Shown: positions 5,801 to 26,800, numbered from the stretch's first letter. The stretch is DNA of 64,000 nucleotides from Amphiscolops sp. MND2022 (GCA_964187785.1 OZ076412.1:27032001-27096000); one strand, 5' to 3'. Numbers and translations are program-made. The notes: a model not told the origin generated them from the letters alone.

Positions 5801-8800
5801 ACATCCATTCTTTTGATGTTTTTGAAGATTTTAAAAAATTGAAGGGGGACTCTTTAGAGACATTGAAAATTTTCGGAAAAAGTCTCACAAAGCCGAAAAA
5901 GAGGGGAAAGTCCCAGGAAGAAGGTTCCTAAACTTCCAGAACAGGATTTGGCTCTATAATCTGAAAGAAAATCCTAAATAGGAAGTAGAATAATGTTATG
6001 AAGAGTACATGTGTGTTTGTTGCAGTGAAGAAGAGCAAAGAGAGTCTGGTGAGTGTGACGGGGGCAGGGGCCAAGAGCAGCCAGGAGGACATGTCTGCGG
6101 AGGAGCACGAGGCCAAGATAGCCGAACAGAAGCAGAAGCAGCAGGAACTCATATCAGGTACCAGCCAATGTGAAATGAAAATGTGTATGTAGTAGGCCCA
6201 TGTTCAAAGAAATTGACAAATTCTTTTCTAATCTGAAAAACCTAGGAAATATTTTATACTTGTTTGGTTCTTAGCAGAATACTGAAGCGACATTGACGCG
6301 GGCTGTCAATTTTTGGCTCAGTTTGTAAAGGTTCGATTGGGTTTAGGAGAAATTAGCCTTCTGAGATTCTTGATCAATAGTGTTTAGGAGTTAGTTTGCG
6401 ACTATGCCGCCTCACTGGTCGCACCAGTTTGTAAAGGTTCGATTGGGTTTAGGAGAAATTAGCCTTCTGAGATTCTTGATCAATAGTGTTTAGGAGTTAG
6501 TTTGCGACTATGCCTTCCTAAACCTTTACAAAAGTTGTCTCTAGGTCTTCCGAGTTCGCAGGAAGGACTTTGTTTCGAGAGAAGAGTTTGAATATATGAA
6601 AAGAATTTGAATTAGTTCGAGTATTATATTCAACAATGTTTGTTTTTACACAATACGCAAGAATACAATACAAACAAAATAATGTAATCATCCAAGTTGA
6701 CACAAATATCCAATCAATAATATCTGAATTGTTTAGCATTCACCACAAATAAATACATCAATTATTTAGGGAGCAATGTTCAGGTAAGTTGTGTAAGTAC
6801 TATAAAAACTGGAATTTTCTGATCTTATTGTCCAACAATTTGGTTAGGACAAGTGTGCTGACTTTTGACCAGAATTACAGTCTATTCAGACCGGTTTGGG
6901 GTTCCTAGAGTTCTCAACAATGTAGTGAGAGTTACTAAGTCTATTGACAATTTACGTGACAGGTTTGTCACACGTTCTAGCTTATAGGAAGCGAAGAACT
7001 AGCTTATAGGAAGCTGAGAGTTAAATAAAATAGTTTTAGCCTATATGACCAGCCAATTACTAGGTCGAAGACAGGATTGTCTTGAGCATAGACTTATAAG
7101 AAGTCTTGCGAATCTAAGTAAATTAAGGGTCTTATCTAACCAGCATTCGCTAGGTTTTTGTTCGGACAAGATTGCCGATTGGGCTCGATCCAGAGGTTCG
7201 GTGCCGTGTTCTAAGAGTTTTAACCTATTGCAATGGACCAGCAAGTTTGCTAGGTCGAGAGGAAGACAAGTTTGTCTAAAGACTTTGAAGAAGTCTTGTG
7301 AGTCTAAGTGAGTTAAAGGCCTTATTTCAACCAGCAGTTTGCTAGGTTGCTTTTTAGACAAGATTGTCAGAATTCTGTTCAATACTTTATAAGGTTACAT
7401 GCATTTTACTTTTTAATCAGTTTGTTTTACTTGCAAGTTAGCTGCAGTTATTGAAATGATCTAGACTAGCAGTCGCTAAGTCTTGACGCAATCGCGTACT
7501 AAGAGGAAAGTGATCTCCGTCGAGAATTGTTTGGGAGCGTTTAGCTCTAGTTAGTTTTCCCTATGATTTTCATAGGAGAACCTTGTCGGTTGTTTGTCTC
7601 TTCAGTCACTAGGACTGGGGGTTGTCTATAAAAGACAGGTAGGAAAAGGGAGCAAAGAAAAAAGAGAGAAATTTTGAGTTGTGAATTTTGAAGTTATTTT
7701 CTAAGTTAAAGAAAATAACTAACCTGAAGTTTGAAGCAAAGATTGGGTCGGAGAGATTTGTTCTCGCAAGAGAGAGATTTTTTTGAGAGAGATGATTTAT
7801 AGCAGAGGCGAAGAGGAGAGTCAGAGTGAGAGTGTGTGAGAGATTTATGCGAGAAAATTATGAATCAATTTGCTAGAGTCCGGCTTTTTTATACGAGCCG
7901 ACCGAACGGTACAACCAATCAAATCGATTGGCGTTTTTCATTGGATACGAAATTATTTCGTCATTATCTCGTCAATATTTTGTCCATAATTGGAATCGCA
8001 TTCACTATTGGATGCAACCGAATAGAAGTCGGCGGGGATTGCATCAGCTACCGAATATGTTCGGCTAACCGAGTTGGCTGACGCAACTCTTTGTATTTGT
8101 CAGGGGAATTAATCCTCTCAAGTGGGGGACTTTGTTCCCACTTGAGAATTCTTTTTGTTTAAAATTGAGAATTTGGCCGTACAAGTGGCGCCTATTATTC
8201 TCTTTTCAGAGATATTTACTGGCACAAGTGGCGTCGCATATTGTCTTTTTCAGGGGAGATAAAAGATAATTGTTTGCACAAGTGGCAAGCGTTTTCTTTT
8301 GTAGAGGGGAATTCTCCCTTTCATATGACGCGCAGCTGTAATTTTGTTTATCTCTAAAATTCTTTCAAGCGTGCCTGGAGAATTGAAAGAATTTGAGTAA
8401 GAGTTCACAAAAATTGAATAAAAAAAAATTCTAGCTCCGATTGAATAATTTTCTAAATATGTTTTTTTCAAATATTAAATTGAAGAAAAAGTTGTGTTAA
8501 ACACAACAACTCACCCGGGGTTTAAGAATGATTAAGTTGAAAGGGGGGCATACAGGGTATTTATGACTTTTACTTCGAAAAATATGGAATTGTTTTTTAG
8601 CCAGGGGTTCTCTGGGTTCATGAGTTCATCATGTGGGATGAAGCACAAGATGGTGATTGCTGTATTGCTGGCTGTGGGAATAGGTTTCTTGAAGCACTCA
8701 CTGTTGTTGTTATTCGTCACAATGAGCTGTTTGTAGGGTTTGTAAATATTGCCTTGACCAAGGAGGTGTATCTCGATAACGCCTTGGAAGGGCCAAGTGA

Positions 8801-11800
8801 GTATCTCATCGTAGGGTCCCGGACACATAGCCAAGCATACTGACATGTATTTCCCTTTGGCAGTGTCGATGCCATAAGGATAAGCTCGTAGATGAAAGGT
8901 GTACCCAAAGGGTTGTGAGAAGAAGATAGGGCTACAGACGTCTTTTAGGCAATTAGGATCACAATAGGGTGCTCTTACATGAGACAAACTTTTTTCGTAT
9001 TTTTCAGCATTCTGAAAAATATCAGAGAATTGATCAAGCCTCCAAATAACTTTGTAGAGGTTCCAATCCCGTGGAATTGATTTCTTTTCGATACGAAGGA
9101 CTCGCATCTCAAGTGCGTCGAGCTTTTTACTGATCTCGTGTATCATATCAGAATCAAATGTGTCATCTTTATATTGGGTGATATTGAGTTTTTGTCGAAG
9201 CAATAGTAACTCATTGATTAGGGAGTCCGTAAGGGACCTCTCATCTTCCAATTGTTCAATAAGGGTAGATGAGCTTGTGTTCATCCTGATAGGTCGTTCT
9301 GAAATTCAATGGAAAAGACTTTAAATAAATGCTGAAATAGCTCTAATAGGTACCACAATTCTCTGGTAGCCTAGGGTCGGATTTTCCAATGTAAATTCTT
9401 GACGGTTAGAATCCCAGAATACAATATTCCAATGATTATATTCGCGTTTCAAAAGATAATTTAATTCGGTCCGGAATCGTGGGTTCCTGGTGAAAATATA
9501 TTTATTAGCAGCTTCCTCGTTTTTTCGTTGTTGTCGTAGTTTTTCGTGAGCCGAGAGGGAAGCTTTTTGCCTTTTGTGAGAACGCTTGATGGACGTTGAA
9601 TGAGGTCGTTTAGTGGGTAGAGGTGTTGTTTTTAAGTTGTTGGGCGGAGGAGGTGGTGCTGTTTCAGTAACACCTTCTGCAATAGTTTCCGTTGAGAGAA
9701 ACTCTAAATCTGTTGGGGAAAGCAAGGGGAGATCAAGTAGTCCGCTGTTGTCGAGTTTTGGTTCACCTGTTAATAACTCGATTTCTTCAGCCACAGTTTT
9801 GTCGGTTTGCATATTCTGAATACTAAACATAAAAAATACAATTACACTGGAGAAACAGTATGGGTATTCGAAGTAGGGGGCCTACTTATGGCAGGGTAAA
9901 TGTGTTCGAGGGTTTCGTGCTCATTGTAATTTTTGTCTGGAGGGGTATCTGAGACCATTGGGTCATGTTGGGGAACTTGATTAAGTGTTGATATCATCGA
10001 AACTGTGAATAGATTGTAGGTTGCTGATAGAAGTATTTTGCCAATACCCCAAGAAGCTCCTGTAACTCGGTGTAGTTCAAATGAGCGAAATGTTATAACA
10101 ATCACGTTGACCAAAAACTTGATAAGAAGAAATCCACCAAACCACTGTCCCAATTTGCTAAACCAGTATTCGATAATACCAAAAGTGCTGATGAACTGTT
10201 CCTTGAAATATCCTGGTGATATCATGTTATCCACATAGAAATTTGTACGTGGTGCAAAGTAACCAAATTCGTCTGGTCCTTTGTCGGCAGCCGAAGGTAT
10301 AATGAGTTCTCGTGAAAACTTTTGCAAAGCATTCCTCGAAGCCGCGCTGATCAGAATATTGTCCCAAAAATCGCTGAGTTGTCCTTTTGTGTACATTCCA
10401 GCATCTTGAGACTCATCGAAAGCATCTTTTGTGAAAGGAGAAATCTCTTTCGGACCGAAGATAGCAGGTCTATCTCTATGTGTAGGCTCTGGATTCAAAG
10501 AAAACCAAGAGTCCTTGTCCTGCATATCTAGTTGAAAAAGGTTCTTTATTCTGTCTGTGCAATTTTGGGTATTTGCGTTGGGGTAGGTTTGTCTGGTGAT
10601 GGGGTCTACGAATTGAATTTGTCCCTTGTAGAATATGGGTATTTTGTCATAACAATTGTTCATGACATGAAGAGGTGATGAAATCAGTGGGCATGAATAG
10701 AGCCAGGCGAGACTACCATCAGTTTCAAGGAACATGGATCTATTTCCAGTAAGCATGTATCCAGCAAGGCGTGGATTTTCCAAAGACAGCATTAAAATAG
10801 TTAGAATTTGGGTCCGTTCCTGTTCGCACTGGTTTTTCAACATTTGAATTTCGGAAGATTGCAGTGCTCGGGTGCTTTCGAAGAACAGGTAATCCAGTTT
10901 TGTTCCAACTTGCATTTCATAATCCATGTTGAGCCAAGTATTAACGTACTTGTCTTTAACTGTGGCATCTCTGTTGTACACGTAAAGTCCAGGTTTCCCA
11001 GAATTGTCTGTGGAGTATTGGAGGGTATAAGATCCTCTTGTTATCCCCATCTTTCTTCCGGAAGCCATGTCAAATCCACCGGTATGTATCACAATGTACA
11101 TGGACTCGTAATTTGTGGGATATACGTCGTTTGGTTTGTTGCAGAATTTTTGAGGGTAGTTCTTCACTTCGAACAAAAATTTGGAGGAAGAATCGTTGGT
11201 GCTCACCATGTGATACCTGTGTTCATTCTTTATCATATTTACATGTTCTTCTTTCAATACTGAAAGTACACAGTTATCAGGGTGATCCCAAATATAGGCG
11301 TAGGGATCCAAGGATGTGCTTTGGCAACCCAGATCGTCAAGTTTGCATGGGAGAGGATTTCCATTTACATTGTGAACTGTTCCATCTCTCAGCTTGACGG
11401 GTAGTGTAACATCTTGAATGTGACTCTCAAAAGTATCTTTGATCATCCAAGACCTTCCAGTGCAATGGTTTCTGTTTTCTTCGCTCTTCTTTCCATTCGT
11501 ATAGGACTGAGTTAGTTTGTTTCCCTTTTTAAACTGGACCATGTGATCCAATATTTGTATCTTTCCCTCTTCTCGTGCTCTTCGACATTGTTCGGGGCTC
11601 ATATCGATATCGCTAGTTATTGTACTTTGTTCTGCATCGATACTCGCATGGTCATGATATCCACAATGCCATTTGAATCTACTGTGCTTTAGGCGGCACA
11701 TAGTGGCATTGAGTTCTGTACGAAAGTGCTTCGTGTAGACAGTGATTATGGCTGGGTTGATTTCAATATTTTCTGGGGAAACGTGGCAGGGTCTCACTTG

Positions 11801-14800
11801 ATTGAGCGCATATAATTTGTTTTCGGTCATTTCTCCACAGTCATAATGCGATACACTAAGCCTTTGTGCGATGTCATCCAGGTTTGGATTGGGGAGGCCA
11901 TTGATTAGGGAGTAGCACGTAATGAATAATATCAAAATTTTACTGCACATTTTGGAACTAACTGGGAGAAATCTTAGGTGTTTGCCAGAGCTCAGTTTTC
12001 AGCAAACTGTTAAGAAAAAATCAAAAAGAGGAAAGTTAAACGGTAGCTTGCTAACCGAGAGTTGGTGGAGTCGAATTTGACAACCAGTTAGAATCAAATT
12101 GATTCTATTGTTGAAGAATGTTCTTCAGAAACGAGAGTTGGTGGAGTCGAATTTGACAACCAATTAGAATCAAATTGATTCTGTTGTTGAAGAATGTTCT
12201 TCAGGAACTGAAACGAGACAATTATTGCCTAACGTTTTCAACCAGGGTGAACACCGAATTTGTATTTGGTAGCTTGCTAACCAAAAATAGGTGTAGTCAC
12301 AGTGATCACTGCTTTAGATTTGAGATTGGTGCACAGGTCTATGGATTGAAGATTTCAGTGTCTGGCTCAATTGATAGCCGTTTTCATAAGTACTGAAAGT
12401 ACACTCTGTTATCAGAAGTGAAGTTATGGAATTTGGGATTTGAAGTGAAAGTTGAGAAAGAGGATCGTAAAATTTTATTTACCAAACAAAAATTTATTTC
12501 AAAACGGAAATGAGATGAAATTTACAAATCATAAAACTGGATAAGATCCTTGTACAATTTGCTATATTTAGGTGAAGTGACACACTCAATGTCCATGACA
12601 CTGGTTAATTCACCTAACACAAGCAGATCAAATTTGGTGATGTGCCTTTCAGGCTTCTGTTCGTATGACAGGAGGGAAGCGGCTAGTGACGCGTATAGAA
12701 GGGTGTCCTTGTAGATTTGTTTCTGATACTTTTTGTCAGGCAGGTCGTAACGTTCAAAGTGAACGCAAATCTTGAATTCGTAGGTCCAAGTCCACCGAAT
12801 ATAGGTGATCAAAAATTGTTTGTTGTTTTCAGCAACGAAAATAGTCCAGGGGCAATTGAAACTGAGTTCTTCGTACTTTTTCTCCCAGAGGGTATCCCAG
12901 TAAATAGTAGGAGGAGGATAAATTTGAGTAATCCTCGGTTTTGTTCTTTTGCGTGAGTCTTTTTTGAGAATAGACTGTGGGTTCATTAGAGATGGTTGTT
13001 TTCTCCTCTGAACAAATCCGAAGGTATGTCTCCCACAAATTTCATAAGGTGGAGAAAATAGTCCCAATATACTGAATGTTGATCTACAAAAACAATATCT
13101 TTTTTCGAGGTGATGTAGTGCTTTACATAGATATAGATTCTGTCTTGATGCAGCTCAGTTCTATAGATCCGGTAGAATTCGTTTTCAATTTTGATGTAGG
13201 TCATACGACGAACTGAAATAGTCAAAAGTTTTTTACCCACGGCAGAGATTGATACTATGATCGTTACCGTGCTGAAAAGTTATTTACCCACGGCAGAGAT
13301 TGATACTTTGATCGTTACCGTGCTCGTTTTTGTGAAAAATTCTTTACCCACGGCAGAGATTGATGCTATGATCGTTACCGTGCTGAAAAGTTATTTACCC
13401 ACGGCAGAGATTGATACTTTGATCGTTACCGTGCTGAAAAGTTATTTACCCACGGCAGAGATTGATACTATGATCGTTACCGTGCTGAAAAGTTATTTAC
13501 CCACGGCAGAGATTGATACTTTGATCTTTACCGTGTTCAATTTTGTGAAAAAGTTATTTACCCACGGCAGAGATTGATACTATGATCGTTACCGTGCTCA
13601 ATTTTGTGAAAAAGTTATTTACCCACGGCAGAGATTGATACTATGATCGTTACCGTGCTCAATTTTGTGAAAAAGTTATTTACCCACGGCAGAGATTGAT
13701 ACTATGATCGTTACCGTGCTCAATTTTGTGAAAAAGTTATTTACCCACGGCAGAGATTGATACTATGATCGTTACCGTGCTCAAGAATTTCTGAAACGAA
13801 GGACTACAAATTAGTTATCAGTTTACGTTAAAATGACAATGAAGAGAAGAGAAAAAGAATTTTGACAAGAAGACTTTTATTTACAATATTAGAAATCTTC
13901 CATTTCCTGCCACAGCTTTAGAGTTTCAAGGAAATCAATGTACATATCATTGTAGCTCGATTTTTTACAAACATTGTCCATCTGGCTAGAGATGGTGTTG
14001 AGAGCGTCGACTTCTTGTTTTGATAGCTGTGGTTCGGGTTTCCTCATGAACGTTACTAACGCCGCAGTGAGGGACGCATAAAGGAATGAACCGGGTTTGA
14101 CCCATTTGTGGTATTTTTGTTTGGACCGGTAGTTATGGAATTTAACTTCTACATCAGCAGTTGGGTGCCAACTCCAACTTAGTTCGTCGATGATCATCGA
14201 GATTTCTTCTAATTCGGGCATGATATTCCAGGGGCAGCATTTGAAATTTATTTTGTTTATAATCACAATAGGGATGTCGTACGCAATGACAGGCTTCATC
14301 TTTGGTTGGCTTGGGCTGAAGTTTGGTCAAAATAGATACTAAAGCACGAAAATGCTGCTTGACTTACTTGGTAAAATTTAAACAAATTTTACAATTGCAA
14401 GAGCTGGATTTTTCAAAAAGCAAAATTTCATACTATTGTTTTTGTTCTTTTCACAAGGTTCTCCTTTAACAAGGCTTTGTCTTGTTTTCTTTTGTTTGTC
14501 TACTTCTTTTGTTTCCTTTTGTAGTCTTTATTGAATAGATTCTTGCATTCTTTTGTTTTCTACATGCTTTTGTTGTTACATGCAGTGGTTCCTTTTGTAA
14601 ACTCCTTTCAGTTGTTGACTTTTGTTTTTCGTTTTCTATGGTTTGCATCACTGGCTTTCATCGGCTTGTTTTGTAAAGATCGCGCTTTTGTTGTTGGATA
14701 ACGGCGGGTGCCATATGTGTTTTTGAAGTATAGTGTTGAAGTTAGCTTTGTATTGAATGCGCTTTTGTTATGGTTCAGTTCTTTTGGTGCCATGTGTTTT

Positions 14801-17800
14801 CGAGTGGTTTGAAAAGTTGTTTGTTCACAATGTGCTTTTGTAATGGTTCAATTCTATGGACGCCATGTGTGTTTTTGAAGTGGTGGCCCAAATTCGGTTT
14901 GTGTTGAATGCGCTTTTGGATGTTATTCTGATCTCTTCACATTTACAAGTAAGTTCGGTTTTCATTTTCAACTTTTGCTTTTTCTTGAATTTTTGGTAAC
15001 GTGTATATGACACGCTCGACCGCCGAAAAAGAAGTAGAGAAAAAAGTTTGAGCCATATGGTGGTGAAGCTTGGAGAGAAAGAAATGAAAGAAAAACAATT
15101 TTGAAGAACGGAGTGGAAAATGGGGGAAATTTTTAAACGGCATAAGGGGGGTGGTGAAAACGAAATTTGAGGTTGTAATTTAGTTGCGTTTCTTTAGGCT
15201 GTTTAGTACACGATGAACCGTTTGCCATTTTCTACCGCGGATGATGCTTATCTGGCACCAGATCTTTTTGCGGATATGCGATCATTGGTGACTGATTTGG
15301 AACTACCAATGATGGCGGGGACGACAGCGGTGGGCGAGGTGTTGCGACGCCCAGAACCACTCCGGAGAGCAGTGAGATTGGCGTTAGGCGAGCACGTAAG
15401 TTGTTGAGTGGTGTAACTTTTGAAGCTAAGACATTGTGGAGAAGAGATTTTGAATTAGTTCTTAGCACTAAGAGTAAAAAGGAAATGGAAAGTATTGTCT
15501 TTAGCTTCGATTGTATAAGTTCTGTAGTTGCAGTTTCTAAGTACGATAAGGTAAACAGAGACGGAATGTTTGTGAAATTAATGTTTTTGTGTATTGATTG
15601 CAGTTTGTTTTAGTGGAGATCGAAGCTACAGTCCGGAGCCAAGGACGTTTGGATTTTTAAACTAAAAGCCATTGTACGGGGATGGGAGATGACTGCTCCA
15701 CAAGATCGGCCGGACATAGCCCGACGGCTGGATCGGAGTCAGTTTTTTCAAGTGCTGCAGGACTTGGCGGAGTTGGGGGGATATATGGTGTGCCTCTGCG
15801 CGGGGCATCCTAAGCCGCCTCCAAATGGGGCGACTGTTGTCCCTGCCGAAAGGGAAGATTTATTATAAACTTTTGTTTATATTGTAAATATTTTGTTTTT
15901 GTGTTTTTATTATTTTAATATTATTTTTGTAATACTTCTGTTTTGACTTTAAATTGTAGGTTGAGAAGTAAGAGAACGTTTTTGACAGTTATAATTTCTA
16001 AAAGTTTAGCTAGAGGAGAAGGATTAGCTAAAACTTTGAGGAATCGCCTCCGTGGAGGCTTGTTGATTAAAACATCAACAATCACAGTGCTATCTATTCC
16101 AGGCAGTTCGACCATTTAAGGCGAACCGCCATAGCACAATTTTTCTTTGTAGTTTTTGTCTCTTGGGGAGACTTGTTGGCGAAAAACCGTCAACAGTCAC
16201 AGTGGCATCTATTCCACGCAGTTCAACCATTTAAGGTGAACCGCCGTACCACAAAATTTTTGTTAACAGAGTTTGTAATTAGGTGATATAAAAATGTCAA
16301 ATTTTTTGAAAAGACAGATGATCAAAAATCCCGATCCAAGAAGTTGTAGGTAACAAGCATGTGTACTGATTACAATTTCCAATAAGGCTGGGGAATTGTC
16401 CAGTGTTATTCGGGGCCAAAAAAAAGGACCGAAGAATTTGGGATTCTGAAATAAGGGTTGACACAATTTTGTACACAATTAAGGTTTTTTATCGGGGGGT
16501 AATTCTGTCCCTGTGCCTCATGACGCAGAGAATGGTGTGTAGTATCCAAATTATGTAGAGCTAGTGTTGTGAACTGAAAAGGTAGATCAGGATTTTGGCG
16601 GGACTTAGTATTAATTGATGTAATAAATGCTAGTGTTATCATTTATTTTTTAATCTTTATAGCCTTTTCTCTCAATGTCTCGGAGGGAACTGCCAGGGGT
16701 GCTTCGTTCGTATTTGGGGTTTTTGGGTTTTTCGGAAAACCGTGTAGTTACCTTCTTTTTGAAGTTAGATAGTTTTCCTGTTTTTGGGGAAACTTGATCA
16801 GGGGGAGACACTGTGTGGATTGGAGGAACGGATGGGAGAACCGGTGTTCTCTTGGGTAGGGGAGTGTTAGAAGAGAATGCGAGTGGTAAGACTGCCACAG
16901 GGAGACGTGGTGTTTGCATAGGTGGAAGTGGATTTGTTCCACAGCTTTGAGGGATACGTTCCCTTAGAATGGAATTGTTAGACGTAGATGGGATCGGGGT
17001 GTGAAATTGTGGGGTTTTCGGAGAAAGGATTCCAGAATCGGTACTGGGGGAAAATTCAGAACCCTTAGAAGTATTGTTATTCGATCCTGAAAGTGGAGTG
17101 ATAATGAGTGGCATAAAATCTAGTTTATGCTCAGGTTGTCCCGAGTTGTGTTTGTCAATTTGAGTTTGGACCAAACGCTTGTAAAAATTATCGTCCTGTT
17201 CTACAGGAGCGTAATTTGTCAGCAATGGGGGTAAAGTTTCCTCTTTGGGAAAATACTCTAGTAAGTGGTTTCGGTGAGTTACTTTAACATTTTCGGGGTT
17301 CTCATCTTCTTTAATCTCGTATGTGGTATTGGTTATTTGTTTTGTTACCGTGAAAGGTCCCACTCGTAATTGTTTCAATTTCTGTGATTTGGATAGGTCG
17401 GGTTTGTGATTCTCCAATAGGACCTTTTGACCAACCGCGAGCGGTCGTCCTAGTTTGAAACGGTTCCGATACTCATGAGCTTTCGATGTGATCTCTCTAC
17501 ATCTTTTGTAGGTAGATGAGTATATTGATTTGAAGTCGTTTTCTCTTGTAAGTAGTTCGGAAGATAACTGTGGTCTAAGGAGTCGATCGAGGGACTTGTT
17601 TCTGAGGTTATTCTCACTATGGGTGTGAGGTTGTAAATCTGCACAAAATTCTGATTTACATTGTTTGTTTTTGTCGCGAATTAGCCCAAGTTTCAAAGTC
17701 ATCGGTATTTGAGGTTTGACGCCGAAGACAATCTCGTAGGGGGTCATACCCGTTGTGTAATTTACGCTTGTGTTATGGGCAAAAGCGAATTTAGATGCAA

Positions 17801-20800
17801 GTGTTGACCAGTTGTTTCCTGACTCGTTGGTGAAATTCCTCCAGTATCTCATGAGGTGTTTGTTTTGGACTTCAACTTTGCCATTTGTCCAGGGCGAATA
17901 AGCAGTGCGCGGTGCCAGCGTTATTCCGAACTCTTTGGTCCAATTTACAAAATCGCGGTTGATAAACGCTGAGCCATTATCGTGGACAATTTTTTGGGGA
18001 ATGCCGTAGGATGTGATCCATTTTTCTAGGGCATTGATTGTGGTCTGAGCTCCTGTATCTCGGACCGGATAGACTCCAAGAAATCTTGAGAATGCATCTA
18101 CTACAACTAGACAATGTGTATTCAGGTTACTGCTTGGTCTGATGGGACCTTTGTGGTCGATATGGATTGTTTTGAAGGGGGTTGTCTCGAGTTCGCCCCA
18201 TTGTTCAAGAGGAGCTTCTTGTAGATCGTGTCGTTTAGACTTGTTAGTCTGGCATTGTAGACAATCTTCTATCAGGGATACTATCCACTTATATCGTCCA
18301 GGCCAAAAGAAATTTTGTCTGATGTTTTCGAATGTTTTAAATATGCCTGGGTGGCCACTGTGAGTATGAGCGTGGGCCAGATTAAAGAGGGGTAGGAATA
18401 ATGATAAGGGGACACAGATTTTCATTTCGCATTTGTCCGTCCCATGAATAGGTTCGTTATAGCAGAGTAGGTTGCTTTCTTTATCGAGAAAAAGTTGATT
18501 GAAATTGTTGAAGTACGACAGCAAAGCCTTCGATTGGTGAATCTCTGGTGTTTTGGCGTTCGGCTTATTCTTGTTTCTAACCCAAGCTCGTACAATTTGT
18601 AATACAGGATCGTTGATTTGTTCTGCAACTAAGGTGGTGATGTCCAAATCAGCGGTTTTAGAGTAATCGCTGAGTTTTTGTAAGAGGTCTTTGGTATCAA
18701 CGTGTGGGAATTGCTCGACATCTAAATTCTTGTTCAATAGAGGCCTTTCACTTTTCTGTGAAATGTTCTTTTCTTTCGCAGTTGATTTATCGCGATAGAA
18801 CTCGTGATCTTCGTTGGAAAGGTGAAGTTCGGCGATTTCCTCTTCATCGTCACTGGAATCGGTTTCGATGTCGTCTATTCTACTATACTCGGGTTCATAC
18901 TGTATTTTGTATGAGGGTAGACAGAGGTTTTTGTATTGATTGATGGATTTTCCCAGTTTGAAACAGTCAGCGATGTCTTGGCGAGTCGCCATTACTGTTT
19001 GTTGGTTCTCATAGTGCTCTACTTCATGTTCTTCTCCGTCATTCTTGAGATGGAGTAGCCTTTGATCTTTGCCTTTTTGGCAGAGGATAGGGAAAAAGTC
19101 ATTGCTGCCACAATGACCATCGTCATTATGCTCGATTGCATAGTGTACTTTCGATCCAAATTCATCATAGAAACTGATATCTCGCGGTATTTCTTTGTGT
19201 AGTTTTTGTAAGTTTTGGGTTTCTTCCAGCGTGACATTTCTACTAAGTATGTCTGGGAATGCGAGGTTGGATCCTTTAGTCCAGATGATTTTGAGGTTTT
19301 GGAACTTGGTGATGATTACCTGATACTTGAAAAAGCGATGTGAAAGCTGTCCTTTTCTTCCCCAGAGGTATAAAATAGGTTTGTGATCGCAATAGAGGTA
19401 TATTGGAAATGGAGATCCAATAATGTAGTGTTCGTATGTTTGGAGTGCTGATACTATGCCACACAATTCGCGATGAAGGGTGGACATCTTTTGTTCAGCT
19501 TTGTCAAATACGCGGGAATTGAAAGAAACTATCCTTTTTCCTTCTGGAAACTGTTGAACTAGTATACAACCAGTACCAACGTTCGAAGAATCGACGTGTA
19601 TGTGGAAGGGGTACTCAGTTGAAGGGACAGCAAGAATAGTGTCCTCACATATACGACTTTTTATATCAGTGAAGAGGTCTTCGTGTTCTTTCGTCCATTT
19701 GAAAGGCGTTGTAGCTTTTATCAAATCGTAGAAGGGCTGGCTATCCACGTGTAAGTTTTTGATATAGCAACTGTAAAATCCAAGACAGCCAAGTACTTTC
19801 ATCACATCTCTTTTACTTTCGGGTGATTTTAAGTTTTTTAGATCCTGTACTCTTTTTGCTAAGGGTTGTATTCCTTGTTCAGAAATAACATGTCCTAGGA
19901 ATTTGACTTTCCTGATGAAGAAATTCGTCTTCTCAGGTGCAGCTTTAAGTCCGGCTTTCCTCAGGAGCTGATGGTACTCATGAATTATCGTGAACATTTC
20001 TTGTTTGGTCTGAGCCTGCATAAGACTGTCATCAAGATAGGTGATAGCTTGTTTTCGCTTGATGAGGGGCTCAAAATGTATAGCCATGAGACGGCTAAAA
20101 AAGTTTGGAAGTCCACAGAGTCCGTAGAAACCACGTACATACGTGTACTGTTTTCCGCCGATAATAAAACTAGTGAGTTTTTGGGTCTCGTCGCTCAAAG
20201 GTACTTGGTGATATGCGCAGGATAAATCGCTGACCGTGAAGTACTTTCCGTTAATCCGAGTCATAATCATCTGAATGGGATCCAATGGCCATGAGTAATT
20301 TGTCAGATCTGTTATGGAATTTAAGTAGCGGGCGTCGATTACTAACTTTACGTAGTCTGCTTTGGGCATCAGAATGATCGGATTGACAAAAAGGGAACCT
20401 AGTTCGTCATCGTCTCCCATTTCTCTAATGATATCGGCTTCTTGGAGTTGTCCAAGTAACTTCTCAAGTTTGTCCTTCAAGTGAAGGGGTACTTTGCTTG
20501 GTCGTTGTTTCTTGAGTTCTGAATTGGCTTTGAGTGTTACGTGAAATTTTTGACGTACTTTTCCCACGTCGAATTTGTGTTGCGAATACACGTCTGCTGA
20601 GTCAATAAGCATATCTATTAGGACAACCAATTCTTCATCTTGGAGGTCAGTATATCGGAAATCGAATTTTTTCACATATTCCTTGATTTCTTCACGCTGA
20701 TATTGGAGGTAGTATTCTATCAAAGCGTCGTTATCTTCTTTTGTTCTAAGTTCAACAAATTGTTCTGTACAGGGTGGCTGACAAGATTTAGCGTCCGTAG

Positions 20801-23800
20801 CAAAATCTGTTTCAAGTTCTTCAGTACCATTAGCAAATTGTTCTGTATAATAGTCAATATCTCCTTCTTCTACTTCTTCTTTTCGTATGGAAGCGTTAAC
20901 AAGTTGGAGGTTCGGTTCGTTTCGTGATACGATCTCGACTTTAATATGTCCATAATCGAAGCTGTTACGGATTATGTCCAAAGCTCCTTTCCAGTGGATG
21001 TTATCTAAGCCATCTTCAATTTTGGGTATTGAAATTGCAGGTATATTGTTTAGTTGTGCGTGTCCAACCAAATTTTCGATGCAATTGCGAAAATCTTCGG
21101 GTTTAATTTTTTCGTAACATCTCTTTTTTGCAACTAGTCCATAGATGAAGCGATTGGCTTCGTTATCCCAAAAGGGTAAAACTGATCCGACGAAAGGTTT
21201 CGACTGGTTCACGAAATTCTGAAAATCTTTCTTCTGTTCGCACAACCTTTTTGCGAACGTGGTTGTCATTTTTCCATCTGCTGAGACACAAAAGGCTAGA
21301 TTTGCATTTGAGGCTCGAAGGGTCTCGCCGGAGCCGTGGCTTAGAAAAACTTGTTGATCTCCTTCGTGTTCGAAGGGAACTGTTGAGTGTAGCAAGAAAC
21401 AGTCGTTGTAGTCTGGGTTTTCCTTTAAAATTGTGTTGACCATCGTGACACAATCCTTTATCTGGAACTTTGGTCGTTCTTTTTCCTGTAGGTCTATGAC
21501 AGCATGACCAATTATTCCTCTATTAAGGGTTATTTGGTGATTTCGATTATTTTCAATCAAAATTGGCAGGTGGGATTCGGACTTCGTACATAAAACATTC
21601 ACAAAGGTAAGTCCTGTTTTGACTGCATTTTTGTGGGGTGTGAATGATGTTCCGGGTGCAAAATGTCTGTTATTTTCGCGGGAGTACTTGTGTAGGCGGG
21701 TAGTTTTGGCATCGATGCAAATTGGGTTATCTGTTCGTATTGTTTCGACCTTTGAAACGTACGGGAAGGGTTTGGTAGCACAAAGGTTACCGTAGCAAAT
21801 CGTGTTAGGACTGTCTTTCAATTCGATTGCAGGCAAATCAAAATGTAATTTAGAAACAAGTTGACGGCAGAAATCTATTCCCAGTAAATTGGGTGTCTTC
21901 GCTTCTGTTATCCAAAACTTTAGCTCTACAGGATGGAGTCCATCCGAGTCGAAACTGAATGTGATTGTTGTTGATCCAAGCATCGGTATAACTTCGCCAG
22001 TATAGGTTTTAGTCAGCTGTTTGCTCCTGACTACCGTGATGGGTTGTCCAAACTGTGCAATTTCCTCAAAAGCTCTGTAATTGATGATTGAACAGGCTGC
22101 TCCTGTATCTAGCATGAATTCTATTTCTAACCCACTATCTTTTTTGGAGTCTCCGGTGGGAAAAAAGAAGAGATTTAGGTGAAAACGTGATTTGAGGTTA
22201 CTTTCTTCGTCAGGTCGCGGAGACTTTAGCAGTTTAAAGGGTTGAACGAGATTGTACTAACTCTGTCCTGTCCTTCTTCGTCAATGAACTGTACGGAGTT
22301 TGGGAAACTGTTATTGTTGGTTGGGAAATTTCGGTTGTACTCAGAATTTGTGTTTTGTGGTCGTGCACTGAAGTTATACGGGCTATTTGGCCTATTTCCA
22401 GTATAGGGTGTATTGTTTCGCAAATTGGTACTAGTCGAAGTTGGTCTACTACCTGAAGAGTGATTGTTATTGCCACTGAAGTTGTTGAAGTTGTTCGACT
22501 GCTGAGGATTATTTCGGTTCCAGTTTTCATTTCGATTGTTCCCTTCGTTAGGTCTGCCTCTGTTGAAGTTTTGGTTCGACTGTTGGTTGCTTCTTTGATT
22601 ATTGGTGAAGTTCGGTCTTGGTGAAGACTGATAATTTTGTTGTGATCCAAATCCGGGTCCCTTCCGTTTGTTGTAGTCGTTGGTGAAGGTGACCTTCTTC
22701 TCTTCATTAGCTCGTGATTGTGCTCTCTTGGCTTCGTCATCGTAGATCTTCTTTCGGCAATATTGGAGTGTATGACCATTCCTTTGGCAATATTTACAAA
22801 ATCGTGTGATGTTTTGGCGGGACGTGTTATTTACGTCTACTGCAGAGACGTGATAGTCATGACAGTGAGAGGATGGGCATCCGTAGGGTAGGGAGTTAGT
22901 TACAGCTAAAGAGTTGATTTGTTGTTCTTTTAGCATATTCTTCATTGCGTTGATGTCTTCTCGTAGTTCGTTTATCAACGTTTTTTGGTTTTGTGAGGAG
23001 TTCGGAGCTAGTTGAGAGCTGATAGTAAAAACAAGGTCTTTATTAGTTACGTGTTCCTGAAATTGTTCCCAAGTAGCGTTGGGGTGTTCAATTAGGTATT
23101 GGTGAGCCTTGTTCTTTAGTTCGTTGGGCGTTAGTCCTCTGACTGCAAATTCAATGTACTTTTGCCTTCTTTGAGCGTTCAGTGCAGCTCTAGCTGCATT
23201 ATCAGCATTTTCTTCGTCTGGCCATCCTCTATCGACAGCTCGTTTCACTCGGTGAAAGTAGTTCTTTATTATTTCTTCATTCCCTCTGACACTGTTTTCT
23301 GCAGTTATTCTGTATCTGTATTTATCTCTATTGTCGGAAAAGCGGGTTAGGAAATGGGTTCTAATATGTTGCCAATCGTGTCCATCTCCTATGTTGTCTG
23401 TATACCACTCGGCGGCAGGTCCTCTTAGTAGGGATGAGAAAAGTGCTTTTTTGCGAAATAAGTATCTTGCTCGATCGTCATCATTGTCGGGTTCATGGCC
23501 CATCGAGAAATTGATTTTGTTCTCAACAGTTGTGAGAAATGATCTGACATCTTGTTCGGGGTCGTTTCCTGAGAATTTGTCCAAAGCGAGGTCGGGAAAT
23601 GAAACTGTGTTATCTGCCATTCCTCTCTTTTGCTTGAATGTGCCTCACTGGTCGCACCAGTTTGTAAAGGTTCGATTGGGTTTAGGAGAAATTAGCCTTC
23701 TGAGATTCTTGATCAATAGTGTTTAGGAGTTAGTTTGCGACTATGCCGCCTCACTGGTCGCACCAGTTTGTAAAGGTTCGATTGGGTTTAGGAGAAATTA

Positions 23801-26800
23801 GCCTTCTGAGATTCTTGATCAATAGTGTTTAGGAGTTAGTTTGCGACTATGCCTTCCTAAACCTTTACAAAAGTTGTCTCTAGGTCTTCCGAGTTCGCAG
23901 GAAGGACTTTGTTTCGAGAGAAGAGTTTGAATATATGAAAAGAATTTGAATTAGTTCGAGTATTATATTCAACAATGTTTGTTTTTACACAATACGCAAG
24001 AATACAATACAAACAAAATAATGTAATCATCCAAGTTGACACAAATATCCAATCAATAATATCTGAATTGTTTAGCATTCACCACAAATAAATACATCAA
24101 TTATTTAGGGAGCAATGTTCAGGTAAGTTGTGTAAGTACTATAAAAACTGGAATTTTCTGATCTTATTGTCCAACAATTTGGTTAGGACAAGTGTGCTGA
24201 CTTTTGACCAGAATTACAGTCTATTCAGACCGGTTTGGGGTTCCTAGAGTTCTCAACAATGTAGTGAGAGTTACTAAGTCTATTGACAATTTACGTGACA
24301 GGTTTGTCACACGTTCTAGCTTATAGGAAGCGAAGAACTAGCTTATAGGAAGCTGAGAGTTAAATAAAATAGTTTTAGCCTATATGACCAGCCAATTACT
24401 AGGTCGAAGACAGGATTGTCTTGAGCATAGACTTATAAGAAGTCTTGCGAATCTAAGTAAATTAAGGGTCTTATCTAACCAGCATTCGCTAGGTTTTTGT
24501 TCGGACAAGATTGCCGATTGGGCTCGATCCAGAGGTTCGGTGCCGTGTTCTAAGAGTTTTAACCTATTGCAATGGACCAGCAAGTTTGCTAGGTCGAGAG
24601 GAAGACAAGTTTGTCTAAAGACTTTGAAGAAGTCTTGTGAGTCTAAGTGAGTTAAAGGCCTTATTTCAACCAGCAGTTTGCTAGGTTGCTTTTTAGACAA
24701 GATTGTCAGAATTCTGTTCAATACTTTATAAGGTTACATGCATTTTACTTTTTAATCAGTTTGTTTTACTTGCAAGTTAGCTGCAGTTATTGAAATGATC
24801 TAGACTAGCAGTCGCTAAGTCTTGACGCAATCGCGTACTAAGAGGAAAGTGATCTCCGTCGAGAATTGTTTGGGAGCGTTTAGCTCTAGTTAGTTTTCCC
24901 TATGATTTTCATAGGAGAACCTTGTCGGTTGTTTGTCTCTTCAGTCACTAGGACTGGGGGTTGTCTATAAAAGACAGGTAGGAAAAGGGAGCAAAGAAAA
25001 AAGAGAGAAATTTTGAGTTGTGAATTTTGAAGTTATTTTCTAAGTTAAAGAAAATAACTAACCTGAAGTTTGAAGCAAAGATTGGGTCGGAGAGATTTGT
25101 TCTCGCAAGAGAGAGATTTTTTTGAGAGAGATGATTTATAGCAGAGGCGAAGAGGAGAGTCAGAGTGAGAGTGTGTGAGAGATTTATGCGAGAAAATTAT
25201 GAATCAATTTGCTAGAGTCCGGCTTTTTTATACGAGCCGACCGAACGGTACAACCAATCAAATCGATTGGCGTTTTTCATTGGATACGAAATTATTTCGT
25301 CATTATCTCGTCAATATTTTGTCCATAATTGGAATCGCATTCACTATTGGATGCAACCGAATAGAAGTCGGCGGGGATTGCATCAGCTACCGAATATGTT
25401 CGGCTAACCGAGTTGGCTGACGCAACTCTTTGTATTTGTCAGGGGAATTAATCCTCTCAAGTGGGGGACTTTGTTCCCACTTGAGAATTCTTTTTGTTTA
25501 AAATTGAGAATTTGGCCGTACAAGTGGCGCCTATTATTCTCTTTTCAGAGATATTTACTGGCACAAGTGGCGTCGCATATTGTCTTTTTCAGGGGAGATA
25601 AAAGATAATTGTTTGCACAAGTGGCAAGCGTTTTCTTTTGTAGAGGGGAATTCTCCCTTTCATATGACGCGCAGCTGTAATTTTGTTTATCTCTAAAATT
25701 CTTTCAAGCGTGCCTGGAGAATTGAAAGAATTTGAGTAAGAGTTCACAAAAATTGAATAAAAAAAAATTCTAGCTCCGATTGAATAATTTTCTAAATATG
25801 TTTTTTTCAAATATTAAATTGAAGAAAAAGTTGTGTTAAACACAACAAGTTGTGTCTCATTCTTCATCGAAAAAGTTACTTTTATCTTTCTGAGTTCAAT
25901 TCATGTTCTTTGAAATTAAACTACAAGAATATTTTATCCAATTACAGTGAAAGATATTGTTCAAGATCTCGAAATAGCGTGATATTTCTACCAAAGAAAC
26001 CTTTGAAGAAATTGAGAAATACTTTAAGGTTGCTTCTGTAATTTTGAACGTTGTTTCTGCGGAGGGGTACATCGATGTTGAAATCCACAAAGGGAGTCTT
26101 TTCAGATGTATAGAAGAGAATGTATACTTCACTGACAGTAAACTCGGATTTTTTACTTGTTTGTATTTAATGAAATCAGTAGTCACAAAAATTTTTGATT
26201 GCACCTTGCTGGGCTTCTAATTAGCGAGAGGTGTTGTTTCATTTCCATGTAAGGAAATACATGTATTGTCATTCTAATTCGTGATACTATTTTTGACCGA
26301 ATGCGTTCATTTTAAAATCAGCCTATATTTGTGTTTGTACTTATTTACACTCCCTTTTCCCCTAGTCTTCTCTACCTCCCGAGCATCTATAAAAAGAAGG
26401 AAAAACGACCTCTTTCTCTATTCAACTCAATCGTCGTCGACGCAAATTTCAATTTAATCCCATTTTCTCCTTCGTTCCGTCTTGTTTTACGGTGACGTAA
26501 ATGTACATCCATATTTGTCGCATCGGTTTCGCTTTCGTGTCGTGATTAGCGGCATTGGTATTAGCAAGCTTAGCCGATTTATGAAGTAATTGGCTTTGGG
26601 TACACCGAAAAAGTGATAGTATTACGTCATTGGGGTTGGATGACGTCAGCAAAGGATGAATGGGATAAAGGAAGGAATGAAAATAGAATTGTGAGTGGGA
26701 GAAATTCCCCAGAGTTGAAAAACAGTGAAATGAAGTGGATGCTAAGGTAGAACATCATGGAATGGTGACGTCACGTACTTCCACATCACGAATTGAGTGT

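What the first reader, a model, noticed from the sequence alone, without database searches (positions are those of the whole stretch)
8532..9284. Captured RING-less TRAF gene as the last cistron of a retroelement
Seen: an intronless 250-aa ORF of coiled coil + MATH with the diagnostic TRAF-C motifs, ending 23 nt before the 3' LTR, which is where retroviral transduction of cellular mRNA often lands. Known: TRAF2/TRAF6 constructs lacking RING and zinc fingers act as dominant negatives on TNFR/TLR-to-NF-kB/JNK signalling, and some large DNA viruses carry TRAF homologs. Inference: a decoy that poisons TRAF trimers or occupies receptor tails to blunt antiviral or apoptotic signalling. It also has a Cys-bearing insert (PYCDPNCLKDVC) before the first conserved strand.
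Basis: partly seen in the sequence, partly recalled or inferred. Interest (0 to 1): 0.92.

Follow-up and report, generated by a model that had tools for sequence, protein, structure and literature searches.

The report
Retroelement carrying a TRAF-domain accessory gene
A young, apparently intact, envelope-bearing Ty3/gypsy retroelement of an unannotated marine invertebrate (possibly an acoel worm) carries a host-derived TRAF immune-signalling adaptor stripped of its catalytic parts as its last gene. Related elements have kept this gene under purifying selection, so a retrovirus-like element outside vertebrates may manipulate host signalling.

Summary
It encodes 250 aa: N-terminal helices plus a TRAF-type MATH domain (Pfam PF21355, 7e-22). 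All 50 best PDB fold matches are TRAF1-6, and there is no RING or zinc finger. It stops 23 nt before the 3' LTR of a 19.5-kb Ty3/gypsy element (6324-25847) with identical 2185-bp LTRs, a 4-bp target duplication, gag, pol, a Monjiviricetes-type fusion env and a 169-aa orfX.

It is not a one-off transduction:
- The order env-orfX-TRAF recurs in 16 dispersed copies and in four diverged lineages (TRAF identity 68, 59, 42 and 29%).
- The element TRAFs form one clade (bootstrap 99).
- Synonymous sites are saturated while pN is 0.25.
- Variants shared between copies are 3 synonymous and 0 nonsynonymous.
- A cellular relative has an intron where the element gene is continuous.

The "Cys-bearing insert" is not special. 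The closest cellular-type TRAFs have the same loop, and its cysteines vary among element copies.

The decoy or dominant-negative mechanism is plausible but untested; the fish megalocytivirus vTRAF, the nearest viral analogue, is pro-apoptotic. I found no report of a retroelement-borne TRAF. Verdict: real, a new variant of a known kind, interest about 0.72.

The parts
25848..25851 (-). Target-site duplication (AACT), 5' side
   Evidence: The same 4 nt flank both LTRs once the LTR ends are fixed by comparison with 11 other copies.
23663..25847 (-). 5' LTR (2185 bp, TG...CA), 100% identical to the 3' LTR; contains a 106-nt tandem duplication near its 3' end
   Evidence: Offset comparison; termini from other copies; tandem repeat.
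23642..23659 (-). Primer-binding-site-like 18-mer starting TGG, 3 nt after the LTR
   Evidence: Read from the sequence. The tRNA was not identified; this is an inference.
22226..23620 (-). gag (464 aa)
   Evidence: PF03732 Retrotrans_gag, 3.4e-5; the cluster has 89 members.
16650..22115 (-). pol (at least 1821 aa): protease motif, RT, RNase H, integrase (H2C2, rve, p58_C) in Ty3/gypsy order
   Evidence: Pfam hits. The ORF listing starts at the first ATG, which sits on the protease motif, so the frame probably opens upstream and is read as gag-pol (inferred).
13889..14299 (-). Small ORF (136 aa), paralogue of the 181-aa ORF
   Evidence: BLASTP 31% identity, E 4e-16; conserved in L001; no Pfam hit.
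13224..13779 (.). Tandem array of about 10 units (period 51-61 nt) between the two small ORFs
12522..13067 (-). Small ORF (181 aa, TTG start as listed), paralogue of the 136-aa ORF
9842..11950 (-). env (702 aa): Monjiviricetes-type viral fusion glycoprotein with a C-terminal membrane anchor
   Evidence: PF24664, 1.4e-39; hydrophobic peak near residues 603-625; intact in 16 of 16 copies.
9321..9830 (-). orfX (169 aa): disordered acidic/proline-rich N-terminus, a basic stretch, and a conserved C-terminal domain of about 70 aa; no known family
   Evidence: No Pfam or PDB match; conserved in L002, L004 and L006.
8532..9284 (-). TRAF-domain-only accessory gene (250 aa); the finding itself
9066..9284 (-). 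N-terminal helical / TRAF-N-like part (residues 1-73; helices 4-38 and 45-67)
   Evidence: AF2 model; heptad test; alignment to the TRAF1 coiled coil.
8559..9065 (-). TRAF-C (MATH) domain (residues 74-242)
   Evidence: Pfam; AF2 beta-sandwich with pLDDT mostly above 90; Foldseek top 50 all TRAFs.
8509..8531 (-). 23-nt spacer between the TRAF stop and the LTR; its 3' half is conserved in the diverged element L002 (polypurine-tract/att region, inferred)
6324..8508 (-). 3' LTR (2185 bp)
6320..6323 (-). Target-site duplication (AACT), 3' side

Best explanation
The ORF is a host-derived TRAF adaptor reduced to its TRAF domain (a proximal coiled coil plus TRAF-C/MATH, with no RING and no zinc fingers). 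It is carried as the 3'-most gene of an envelope-bearing Ty3/gypsy retroelement family. It was acquired once, long ago, probably from a processed transcript of a TRAF1/2/3/5-like cellular gene, and has since been inherited with the element under purifying selection. It therefore serves the element. The most likely mode of action (inferred, not shown) is as a catalytically inert TRAF mimic. It would trimerise through the proximal coiled coil and use the conserved peptide-binding face of the MATH domain to occupy receptor or adaptor motifs, or it would mix into host TRAF trimers. Either way it would redirect or damp TRAF-dependent immune, stress or death signalling in cells where the element is expressed. 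Identity and selection are shown (confidence about 0.95). The direction of the effect, inhibition versus activation or apoptosis, is not shown. The confidence figure given is for the whole statement including the mechanism.
For: Identity:
- Pfam PF21355 at 7e-22.
- phmmer against PDB hits only TRAFs, ordered TRAF1/5/2/3, then TRAF4, then TRAF6.
- AF2 mean pLDDT is 83.8, and all 50 best Foldseek PDB matches are TRAF domains at E about 1e-12.

Part of the element, not a neighbouring gene:
- It holds the same position in 16 copies with different flanks.
- It holds the same position in four diverged lineages, L003, L002, L004 and L006.

Single old capture: the element TRAFs are monophyletic, with NJ bootstrap 99.

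Processed origin: the cellular-type relative in L007 has a GTAAGT intron inside MATH where the element gene is continuous.

Selection:
- Window versus L002 gives pS 0.85 (saturated) against pN 0.245.
- Window versus L001 gives 6 synonymous to 3 nonsynonymous differences, pN/pS about 0.13, the same as env.
- Among 16 copies, variants shared between copies are 3 synonymous and 0 nonsynonymous. Singletons are 5 synonymous, 8 nonsynonymous and 1 stop.
- The gene is intact in 14 of 16 copies.

Mechanistic hints:
- The helix next to MATH has heptad periodicity.
- R133 and D140 are kept in the three intact lineages, and Y135 is kept or becomes F. By the PDB alignments these correspond to the Arg/Tyr/Asp of the TRAF2 peptide groove; the residue correspondence rests on my knowledge of TRAF2 and is an inference.

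Precedent: viral TRAF-domain proteins of megalocytiviruses are the best BFVD matches (PMC3352826).
Against: There is no expression, interaction or signalling evidence of any kind. No transcript was found in the collections (the sources of all relatives are genome or metagenome assemblies). The serine-rich strand that contacts peptides in vertebrate TRAF2 is not obviously kept (alignment). Helix 4-38 shows no clear heptad register. The studied viral TRAF (ISKNV ORF111L) activates apoptosis rather than acting as a silent decoy (PMC3352826), and cellular TRAF1, which naturally lacks a RING, both promotes and restrains signalling (my knowledge). The gene evolves about twice as fast as env at the protein level and is lost or decayed in some copies. 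The within-family counts are small. The host, and therefore its TRAF pathway, is not identified with certainty.
Confidence: 0.55

Rival explanations
1. The TRAF-domain protein is an activator or pro-death factor rather than a decoy. It would scaffold host adaptors (TRADD-like proteins, IAPs, TRAF2-like proteins) to switch on NF-kB/JNK or caspases. That could drive LTR transcription or help release and spread of enveloped particles.
For: The closest viral structural analogues are megalocytivirus vTRAFs. One of them binds TRADD and induces caspase-8 apoptosis (PMC3352826). The element carries a fusion env, so cell-to-cell spread is plausible. RING-less TRAF1 can enhance signalling (my knowledge).
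Against: There is no direct evidence. No TRAF-binding motif is conserved in the element's own env tail or other ORFs. An element inherited through the germ line is expected to be harmed by killing its cell.
Confidence: 0.2
2. The MATH domain is used for the element's own life cycle. It would act as a peptide-binding adaptor that links Gag, Env or orfX to host trafficking or ubiquitin machinery, as SPOP/USP7-type MATH domains bind substrates, and would have nothing to do with TNFR/TLR-type signalling.
For: It is always adjacent to env and orfX with very short spacers of 7-39 nt. orfX co-varies in presence with it.
Against: Fold and sequence are specifically TRAF-type, not SPOP/USP7/meprin-type. 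The TRAF-N-like coiled coil is kept. No canonical TRAF-binding motif is conserved in the element's proteins.
Confidence: 0.15
3. It is a neutral passenger: a recently transduced host fragment with no function, kept open only because the copies are young.
For: The LTRs are identical and the copies are at least 98% alike, so within this family open frames alone prove little. Two of 16 copies have lost the frame.
Against: Intact orthologues exist at 59% and 42% identity in diverged elements with saturated synonymous sites. The element TRAFs are monophyletic. Variants shared between copies are all synonymous.
Confidence: 0.03
4. It is a cellular gene that merely lies next to an LTR, through an assembly or annotation coincidence.
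For: None beyond the a priori possibility.
Against: It lies between the two identical LTRs and inside the target-site duplication. It sits at the same place in 16 copies with unrelated flanks.
Confidence: 0.01

Closest known systems
Viral TRAF proteins of megalocytiviruses (ISKNV ORF111L; orange-spotted grouper iridovirus TRAF2-like protein)
   Same: Virus-borne, host-derived proteins that keep the TRAF domain. They are the best BFVD structural matches (E 2e-11 to 2e-12) and act on host death and immune adaptors (PMC3352826).
   Different: They are carried by large dsDNA viruses of fish, not by a reverse-transcribing element. Sequence identity is about 19-20%, so they are an independent capture. 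Their known effect is pro-apoptotic.
Cellular TRAF1 and truncated TRAF2/3/6 'TRAF-domain-only' constructs
   Same: The architecture is a coiled coil plus TRAF-C without a RING. The best PDB sequence match is TRAF1 (4e-13).
   Different: TRAF1 keeps one zinc finger and is a regulated host gene. Here nothing lies N-terminal of the helices. Identity to vertebrate TRAFs is only 20-25%.
Host-derived genes kept between env and the 3' LTR of retroviruses (v-src of Rous sarcoma virus; rv-cyclin of walleye dermal sarcoma virus; v-rel as a captured NF-kB-pathway gene)
   Same: A cellular coding sequence, intron-free, sits at the 3' end of the genome just before the LTR. As with rv-cyclin, it is a stably inherited accessory gene of a replication-competent lineage (my knowledge).
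   Different: Those are vertebrate Retroviridae, whereas this is a Ty3/gypsy (Metaviridae-like) element of an invertebrate. The captured gene here is an immune adaptor, not a growth regulator.
Envelope-carrying Ty3/gypsy elements of metazoans with gB/chuvirus-like glycoproteins, and bdelloid LTR elements with captured ORF3s
   Same: The backbone is gag-pol plus a fusion glycoprotein of negative-strand RNA virus type (PF24664; PMC13524379; PMC7642597). The bdelloid elements show modular capture of extra ORFs (PMC5408684).
   Different: Neither paper mentions TRAF or MATH, and PMC13524379 does not mention acoels. This element carries at least four further ORFs after pol and is 19.5 kb long.

Membership tests
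TRAF family (TRAF domain) | C-terminal TRAF-C / MATH beta-sandwich of TRAF type | tested here: met
   PF21355 scores 78.5 bits against a cut-off of 27.4. All 27 PDB sequence hits and all top 50 Foldseek hits are TRAF1-6.
TRAF family (TRAF domain) | TRAF-N coiled coil directly preceding TRAF-C | tested here: met
   AF2 predicts a helix at 45-67 abutting MATH. Its heptad signal is reached by 15 of 2000 shuffles. It aligns with the TRAF1 coiled coil. The distal helix 4-38 is inconclusive.
TRAF family (TRAF domain) | N-terminal RING and TRAF-type zinc fingers (canonical TRAF2-6 architecture) | tested here: not met
   There is no RING or zf-TRAF hit in this ORF or any other ORF of the element. The protein starts 3 residues before the first helix. 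It is therefore a TRAF-domain-only protein, not a canonical full-length TRAF.
TRAF family (TRAF domain) | Homotrimer formation and binding of receptor peptide motifs | not testable with these tools
   Only a monomer model could be made. The groove residues R133 and D140 are conserved and Y135 is Y or F; the correspondence to TRAF2 is inferred.
Ty3/gypsy LTR retroelement (Metaviridae-like) | Two LTRs with TG...CA ends, a target-site duplication, and a PBS next to the 5' LTR | tested here: met
   The 2185-bp LTRs are 100% identical. The termini are fixed by 11 other copies and the TSD is AACT. An 18-nt TGG-starting PBS-like site is present; its tRNA is not identified.
Ty3/gypsy LTR retroelement (Metaviridae-like) | gag plus pol with the order protease-RT-RNase H-integrase | tested here: met
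   Pfam positions along the 1821-aa pol, plus gag PF03732.
Envelope-carrying (errantivirus-like) gypsy elements | A viral fusion glycoprotein gene downstream of pol | tested here: met
   PF24664 Monjiviricetes_fusion at 1.4e-39. It has a C-terminal hydrophobic anchor and is under purifying selection. Phylogenetic placement of pol within named errantivirus clades was not tested.
Acutely transduced retroviral gene (v-onc type) | A recent capture, usually at the cost of viral genes, confined to one lineage | tested here: not met
   gag, pol and env are all intact alongside it. The gene is shared by lineages down to 29% identity and is monophyletic.

The most novel reading that the evidence does not exclude
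An invertebrate 'complex retrovirus': a currently or very recently active, envelope-bearing Ty3/gypsy lineage, possibly of acoels. It has kept for a long time a host-derived immune or death-signalling adaptor mimic (vTRAF), together with further accessory genes (orfX and two paralogous small ORFs). This would make it the first reverse-transcribing element known to carry a TRAF-pathway modulator.
Probability: 0.45. Interest if true: 0.85.

Novelty: new variant of a known kind. Interest (0 to 1): 0.72.

Why it matters
Host-derived immune modulators are a hallmark of large DNA viruses and, in a few cases, of vertebrate retroviruses. LTR retroelements of invertebrates are generally thought of as gag-pol(-env) machines. 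A TRAF-domain gene held under purifying selection through deep divergence of an env-bearing gypsy lineage would show that such elements also invest in manipulating host signalling. It would also give a natural 'dominant-negative-like' TRAF to compare with engineered ones. And it would point to TRAF-dependent pathways as relevant to retroelement control in an early-branching or poorly studied animal group. Finally, it offers a dated marker (a single capture) for tracing this element family.

Tried and rejected
- **Env-tail binding.** I looked for a TRAF-binding motif in the env cytoplasmic tail or other element proteins. No conserved major or TRAF6-type motif was found, so the idea was dropped.
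- **Cys-bearing insert as a zinc or disulfide site.** Rejected, because the cysteines are not conserved and the loop is shared with cellular relatives.
- **Host identification through the GT61 gene at 62.5-64 kb.** There were only two hits and none was named.
- **Names for the closest cellular-type TRAFs.** None carries a name.
- **Scans of IMG/VR and JGI metagenome contigs for relatives.** Nothing was found.
- **Rfam on the window.** No family matched.
- **Structure prediction of orfX.** A PDB profile search for orfX and a PDB sequence search for env found nothing.
- **RING or zinc-finger exons upstream of the cellular relative in L007.** None was evident in the ORF listing. This is inconclusive, so I make no claim about the donor's N-terminus.
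- **dS estimates between lineages.** These failed because synonymous sites are saturated, so only pS and pN are given.
Full report
**1. What is at the coordinates**

The interval 8532-9284 is closed in the + strand frame. On the minus strand it is a 250-codon ATG-to-TAA ORF. Pfam assigns residues 115-240 to TRAF-mep_MATH (PF21355, 7.3e-22, 78.5 bits against a cut-off of 27.4) and to MATH_2.

A phmmer search of all PDB chains returns 27 sequences, every one a TRAF. The order is TRAF1 (4e-13), TRAF5, TRAF2, TRAF3, then TRAF4, then TRAF6.

An AlphaFold2 model built on 31 relatives has mean pLDDT 83.8. It shows helices at 4-38 and 45-67 and a beta-sandwich at 76-242, mostly above pLDDT 90. Foldseek against the PDB gives TRAF domains for all 50 best matches (E about 1e-12, TM to target 0.66-0.79). 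No SPOP-, USP7-, meprin- or Siah-type MATH appears among them.

No RING or TRAF zinc finger is found in this or any other ORF of the element.

The helix next to the MATH domain has a clear heptad pattern (15 of 2000 shuffles reach it) and aligns with the TRAF1 coiled coil. The distal helix gives no clear register in my crude test.

**2. The element around it**

Comparing the window with itself at an offset of 17,339 nt shows two 100% identical repeats. Their true ends were fixed by the point where 11 other copies diverge into unrelated flanks.
- The LTRs are 2185 bp with TG...CA ends, at 6324-8508 and 23663-25847.
- They are flanked by a 4-bp duplication, AACT.
- The element is 19,524 bp long and lies on the minus strand.

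In element order it carries:
- a TGG-starting PBS-like 18-mer;
- gag (464 aa) and pol (at least 1821 aa) with RT, RNase H and integrase in Ty3/gypsy order;
- about 4.7 kb holding two paralogous small ORFs (31% identity, E 4e-16) on either side of a tandem array;
- a 702-aa env that matches the Monjiviricetes viral fusion glycoprotein family (PF24664, 1.4e-39) and has a C-terminal hydrophobic anchor;
- a 169-aa orfX without known relatives;
- the TRAF ORF;
- 23 nt of spacer, then the 3' LTR.

Spacers between env, orfX and TRAF are 11 and 36 nt here and 7-39 nt in relatives.

The rest of the window holds host genes: an ALDH3-type gene at about 27.1-29.1 kb and a GT61 glycosyltransferase at 62.5-64.0 kb. 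It also holds other retroelement remains.

**3. Is the gene part of the element, and for how long?**

The exact protein occurs on 16 contigs, and its 90% cluster has 61 members.

I fetched 14 further copies through their orfX protein, that is, not selected on TRAF. All have env-orfX-TRAF-LTR in the same register, at different genomic sites.

The same order is also found in diverged elements from this and other assemblies:

| Locus | gag | pol | env | orfX | TRAF | State |
|---|---|---|---|---|---|---|
| L002 | not covered | not covered | 79% | 47% | 59% | intact over the stretch covered |
| L004 | 66% | 65% | 62% | 48% | 42% | TRAF intact |
| L003 | no match | no match | matched in several pieces | matched in several pieces | 68% | decayed |
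| L006 | no match | 59% | 45% | 40% | 29% | decayed |

In L002 the stop codon again lies about 22 nt before a conserved LTR start.

In a neighbour-joining tree of the MATH region the element-borne proteins form one clade with 99% bootstrap. They are separate from the cellular-type TRAFs. This indicates one old capture, not a recent transduction.

**4. Origin**

The nearest proteins outside the element clade are 40-43% identical over MATH (P0093, P0100, P0104) and have long coiled-coil N-terminal parts.

The gene of P0093, in locus L007, has a GTAAGT intron of about 190 nt inside the MATH domain. The element gene reads straight through that point. This fits capture of a processed transcript.

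I could not show that the donor had a RING. None of these relatives carries a name.

The loop with the quoted cysteines has the same length as in these cellular relatives, which have a similar C-x-x-C-S-P segment. The cysteines are replaced in other element copies. It is not an insert peculiar to this gene and is unlikely to be a metal or disulfide site.

**5. Selection**

*Window versus L002.* Synonymous sites are saturated in all three genes; pN differs.

| Gene | pS | pN |
|---|---|---|
| TRAF | 0.85 | 0.245 |
| env | 0.84 | 0.132 |
| orfX | 0.875 | 0.379 |

*Window versus L001.* TRAF has 6 synonymous and 3 nonsynonymous differences, giving pN/pS of about 0.13. That equals env (0.14) and orfX (0.15).

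*Sixteen copies*.

| Gene | Variant class | Synonymous | Nonsynonymous | Stop |
|---|---|---|---|---|
| TRAF | shared by two or more copies (arose while the lineage was replicating) | 3 | 0 | 0 |
| TRAF | singletons (mostly after insertion) | 5 | 8 | 1 |
| env | shared | 24 | 5 | 0 |
| env | singletons | 18 | 19 | 0 |

The TRAF frame is intact in 14 of 16 copies. The other two have each lost it.

The TRAF counts within the family are small. The deep comparisons carry the argument.

**6. Mechanism**

*Shown:* a TRAF-type fold, a proximal coiled coil, no catalytic or zinc-finger part, and long-term purifying selection within a mobile element.

*Inferred:* a trimeric, inert TRAF mimic that competes for receptor or adaptor motifs, or mixes into host TRAF trimers.
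- Supporting detail: R133 and D140 are kept in all three intact lineages, and Y135 is Y or F.
- By the PDB alignments these fall where TRAF2 has the Arg, Tyr and Asp that hold receptor peptides. That correspondence rests on my knowledge of TRAF2 and was not tested.
- The serine-rich strand of vertebrate TRAF2 is not obviously kept.

The direction of the effect is open. The best viral structural analogues are megalocytivirus vTRAFs, and ISKNV ORF111L binds TRADD and triggers caspase-8 apoptosis (PMC3352826). I found no conserved TRAF-binding motif in the element's own proteins.

**7. Host**

All relatives come from unannotated ENA assemblies. For the neighbouring ALDH3 exon, the best named hit is Symsagittifera roscoffensis, an acoel, at 66% identity. 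Molluscs and others follow at 55-60%. The host is therefore tentatively an acoel or other xenacoelomorph. This is weak evidence from one paralogous gene family.

**8. Novelty**

Full-text searches found the following:
- viral TRAFs only in large DNA viruses;
- env-carrying gypsy elements with chuvirus/gB-like glycoproteins in many metazoans (PMC13524379, PMC7642597), with no mention of TRAF or MATH (PMC13524379 checked) or of acoels (PMC13524379 checked);
- captured extra ORFs in bdelloid elements (PMC5408684) that are esterases or exonucleases.

I therefore rate this a new variant of a known kind: virus- or retroelement-captured host genes, and viral TRAF mimics.

- In one search my script printed, for some broken copies of relatives, the query range of the best local alignment. 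That indirectly bounds a break. I do not repeat or use those numbers.
- None was entered into a tool or used as evidence.

Noticed in passing
window 9321-9830 (-); L002 2241-2729; L004 992-1480: orfX always sits between env and TRAF. It has a variable acidic/proline-rich N-terminus with a leucine-rich patch, a basic stretch, and a strongly conserved C-terminal domain of about 70 aa with no Pfam or PDB relative. A Rev/Rex-like export or regulatory role is a guess only.
   Followed up: partly
window 12522-14299 (-): Two paralogous small ORFs (181 and 136 aa, 31% identity, E 4e-16) flank a tandem array of about 10 units (13224-13779) in the 4.7-kb stretch between pol and env. Both are conserved in copy L001. 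About 2.3 kb after pol has no ORF above 78 aa.
   Followed up: partly
window 6324-6514 and 23642-23853: The 3' end of each LTR carries a 106-nt tandem duplication. Its unit includes a copy of the LTR-end-plus-PBS sequence, so a second PBS-like site lies inside the LTR.
   Followed up: no
window 9842-9990 (-), env C-terminus: The env cytoplasmic tail ends in a motif conserved across three lineages: a Y-P-x-I type tyrosine signal and a terminal S-P-V, which resembles a PDZ-binding end.
   Followed up: no
L008 and L009 (contigs of 39 kb and 194 kb; also Logan L010): One of the closer TRAF-like relatives (P0101, 33% identity, with a zinc-finger remnant) lies in densely packed, apparently intron-free contigs. 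These also hold HSP70, protein kinases, a BIR+RING IAP-like gene, a MAM-domain gene and two more MATH genes, and were seen in three independent datasets. It looks like a giant virus or a very compact genome carrying several TRAF-like genes.
   Followed up: no
representative search hits P0070-P0098: Many proteins carry 4-13 tandem TRAF-type MATH domains (up to 3052 aa) and rank among the best profile hits. Their organisms are unknown.
   Followed up: no
window 40889-44573 (-) and 48539-54780 (+): Other retroelement remains are present: gypsy-type integrase ORFs, and a BEL/Pao element (Peptidase_A17, RT, rve, DUF5641). A BEL/Pao element also lies next to the decayed TRAF copy in L003.
   Followed up: no
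window 27144-29100 (-) and 62490-63980 (-): Host genes: an ALDH3-family gene in two large exons, whose best named relative is from the acoel Symsagittifera roscoffensis (66%), and a single-exon GT61 glycosyltransferase with almost no relatives in the protein collection.
   Followed up: partly
window 7041-7382 and 24380-24721 (-): A 113-aa TTG-started ORF lies inside each LTR. It was not tested and may be chance.
   Followed up: no
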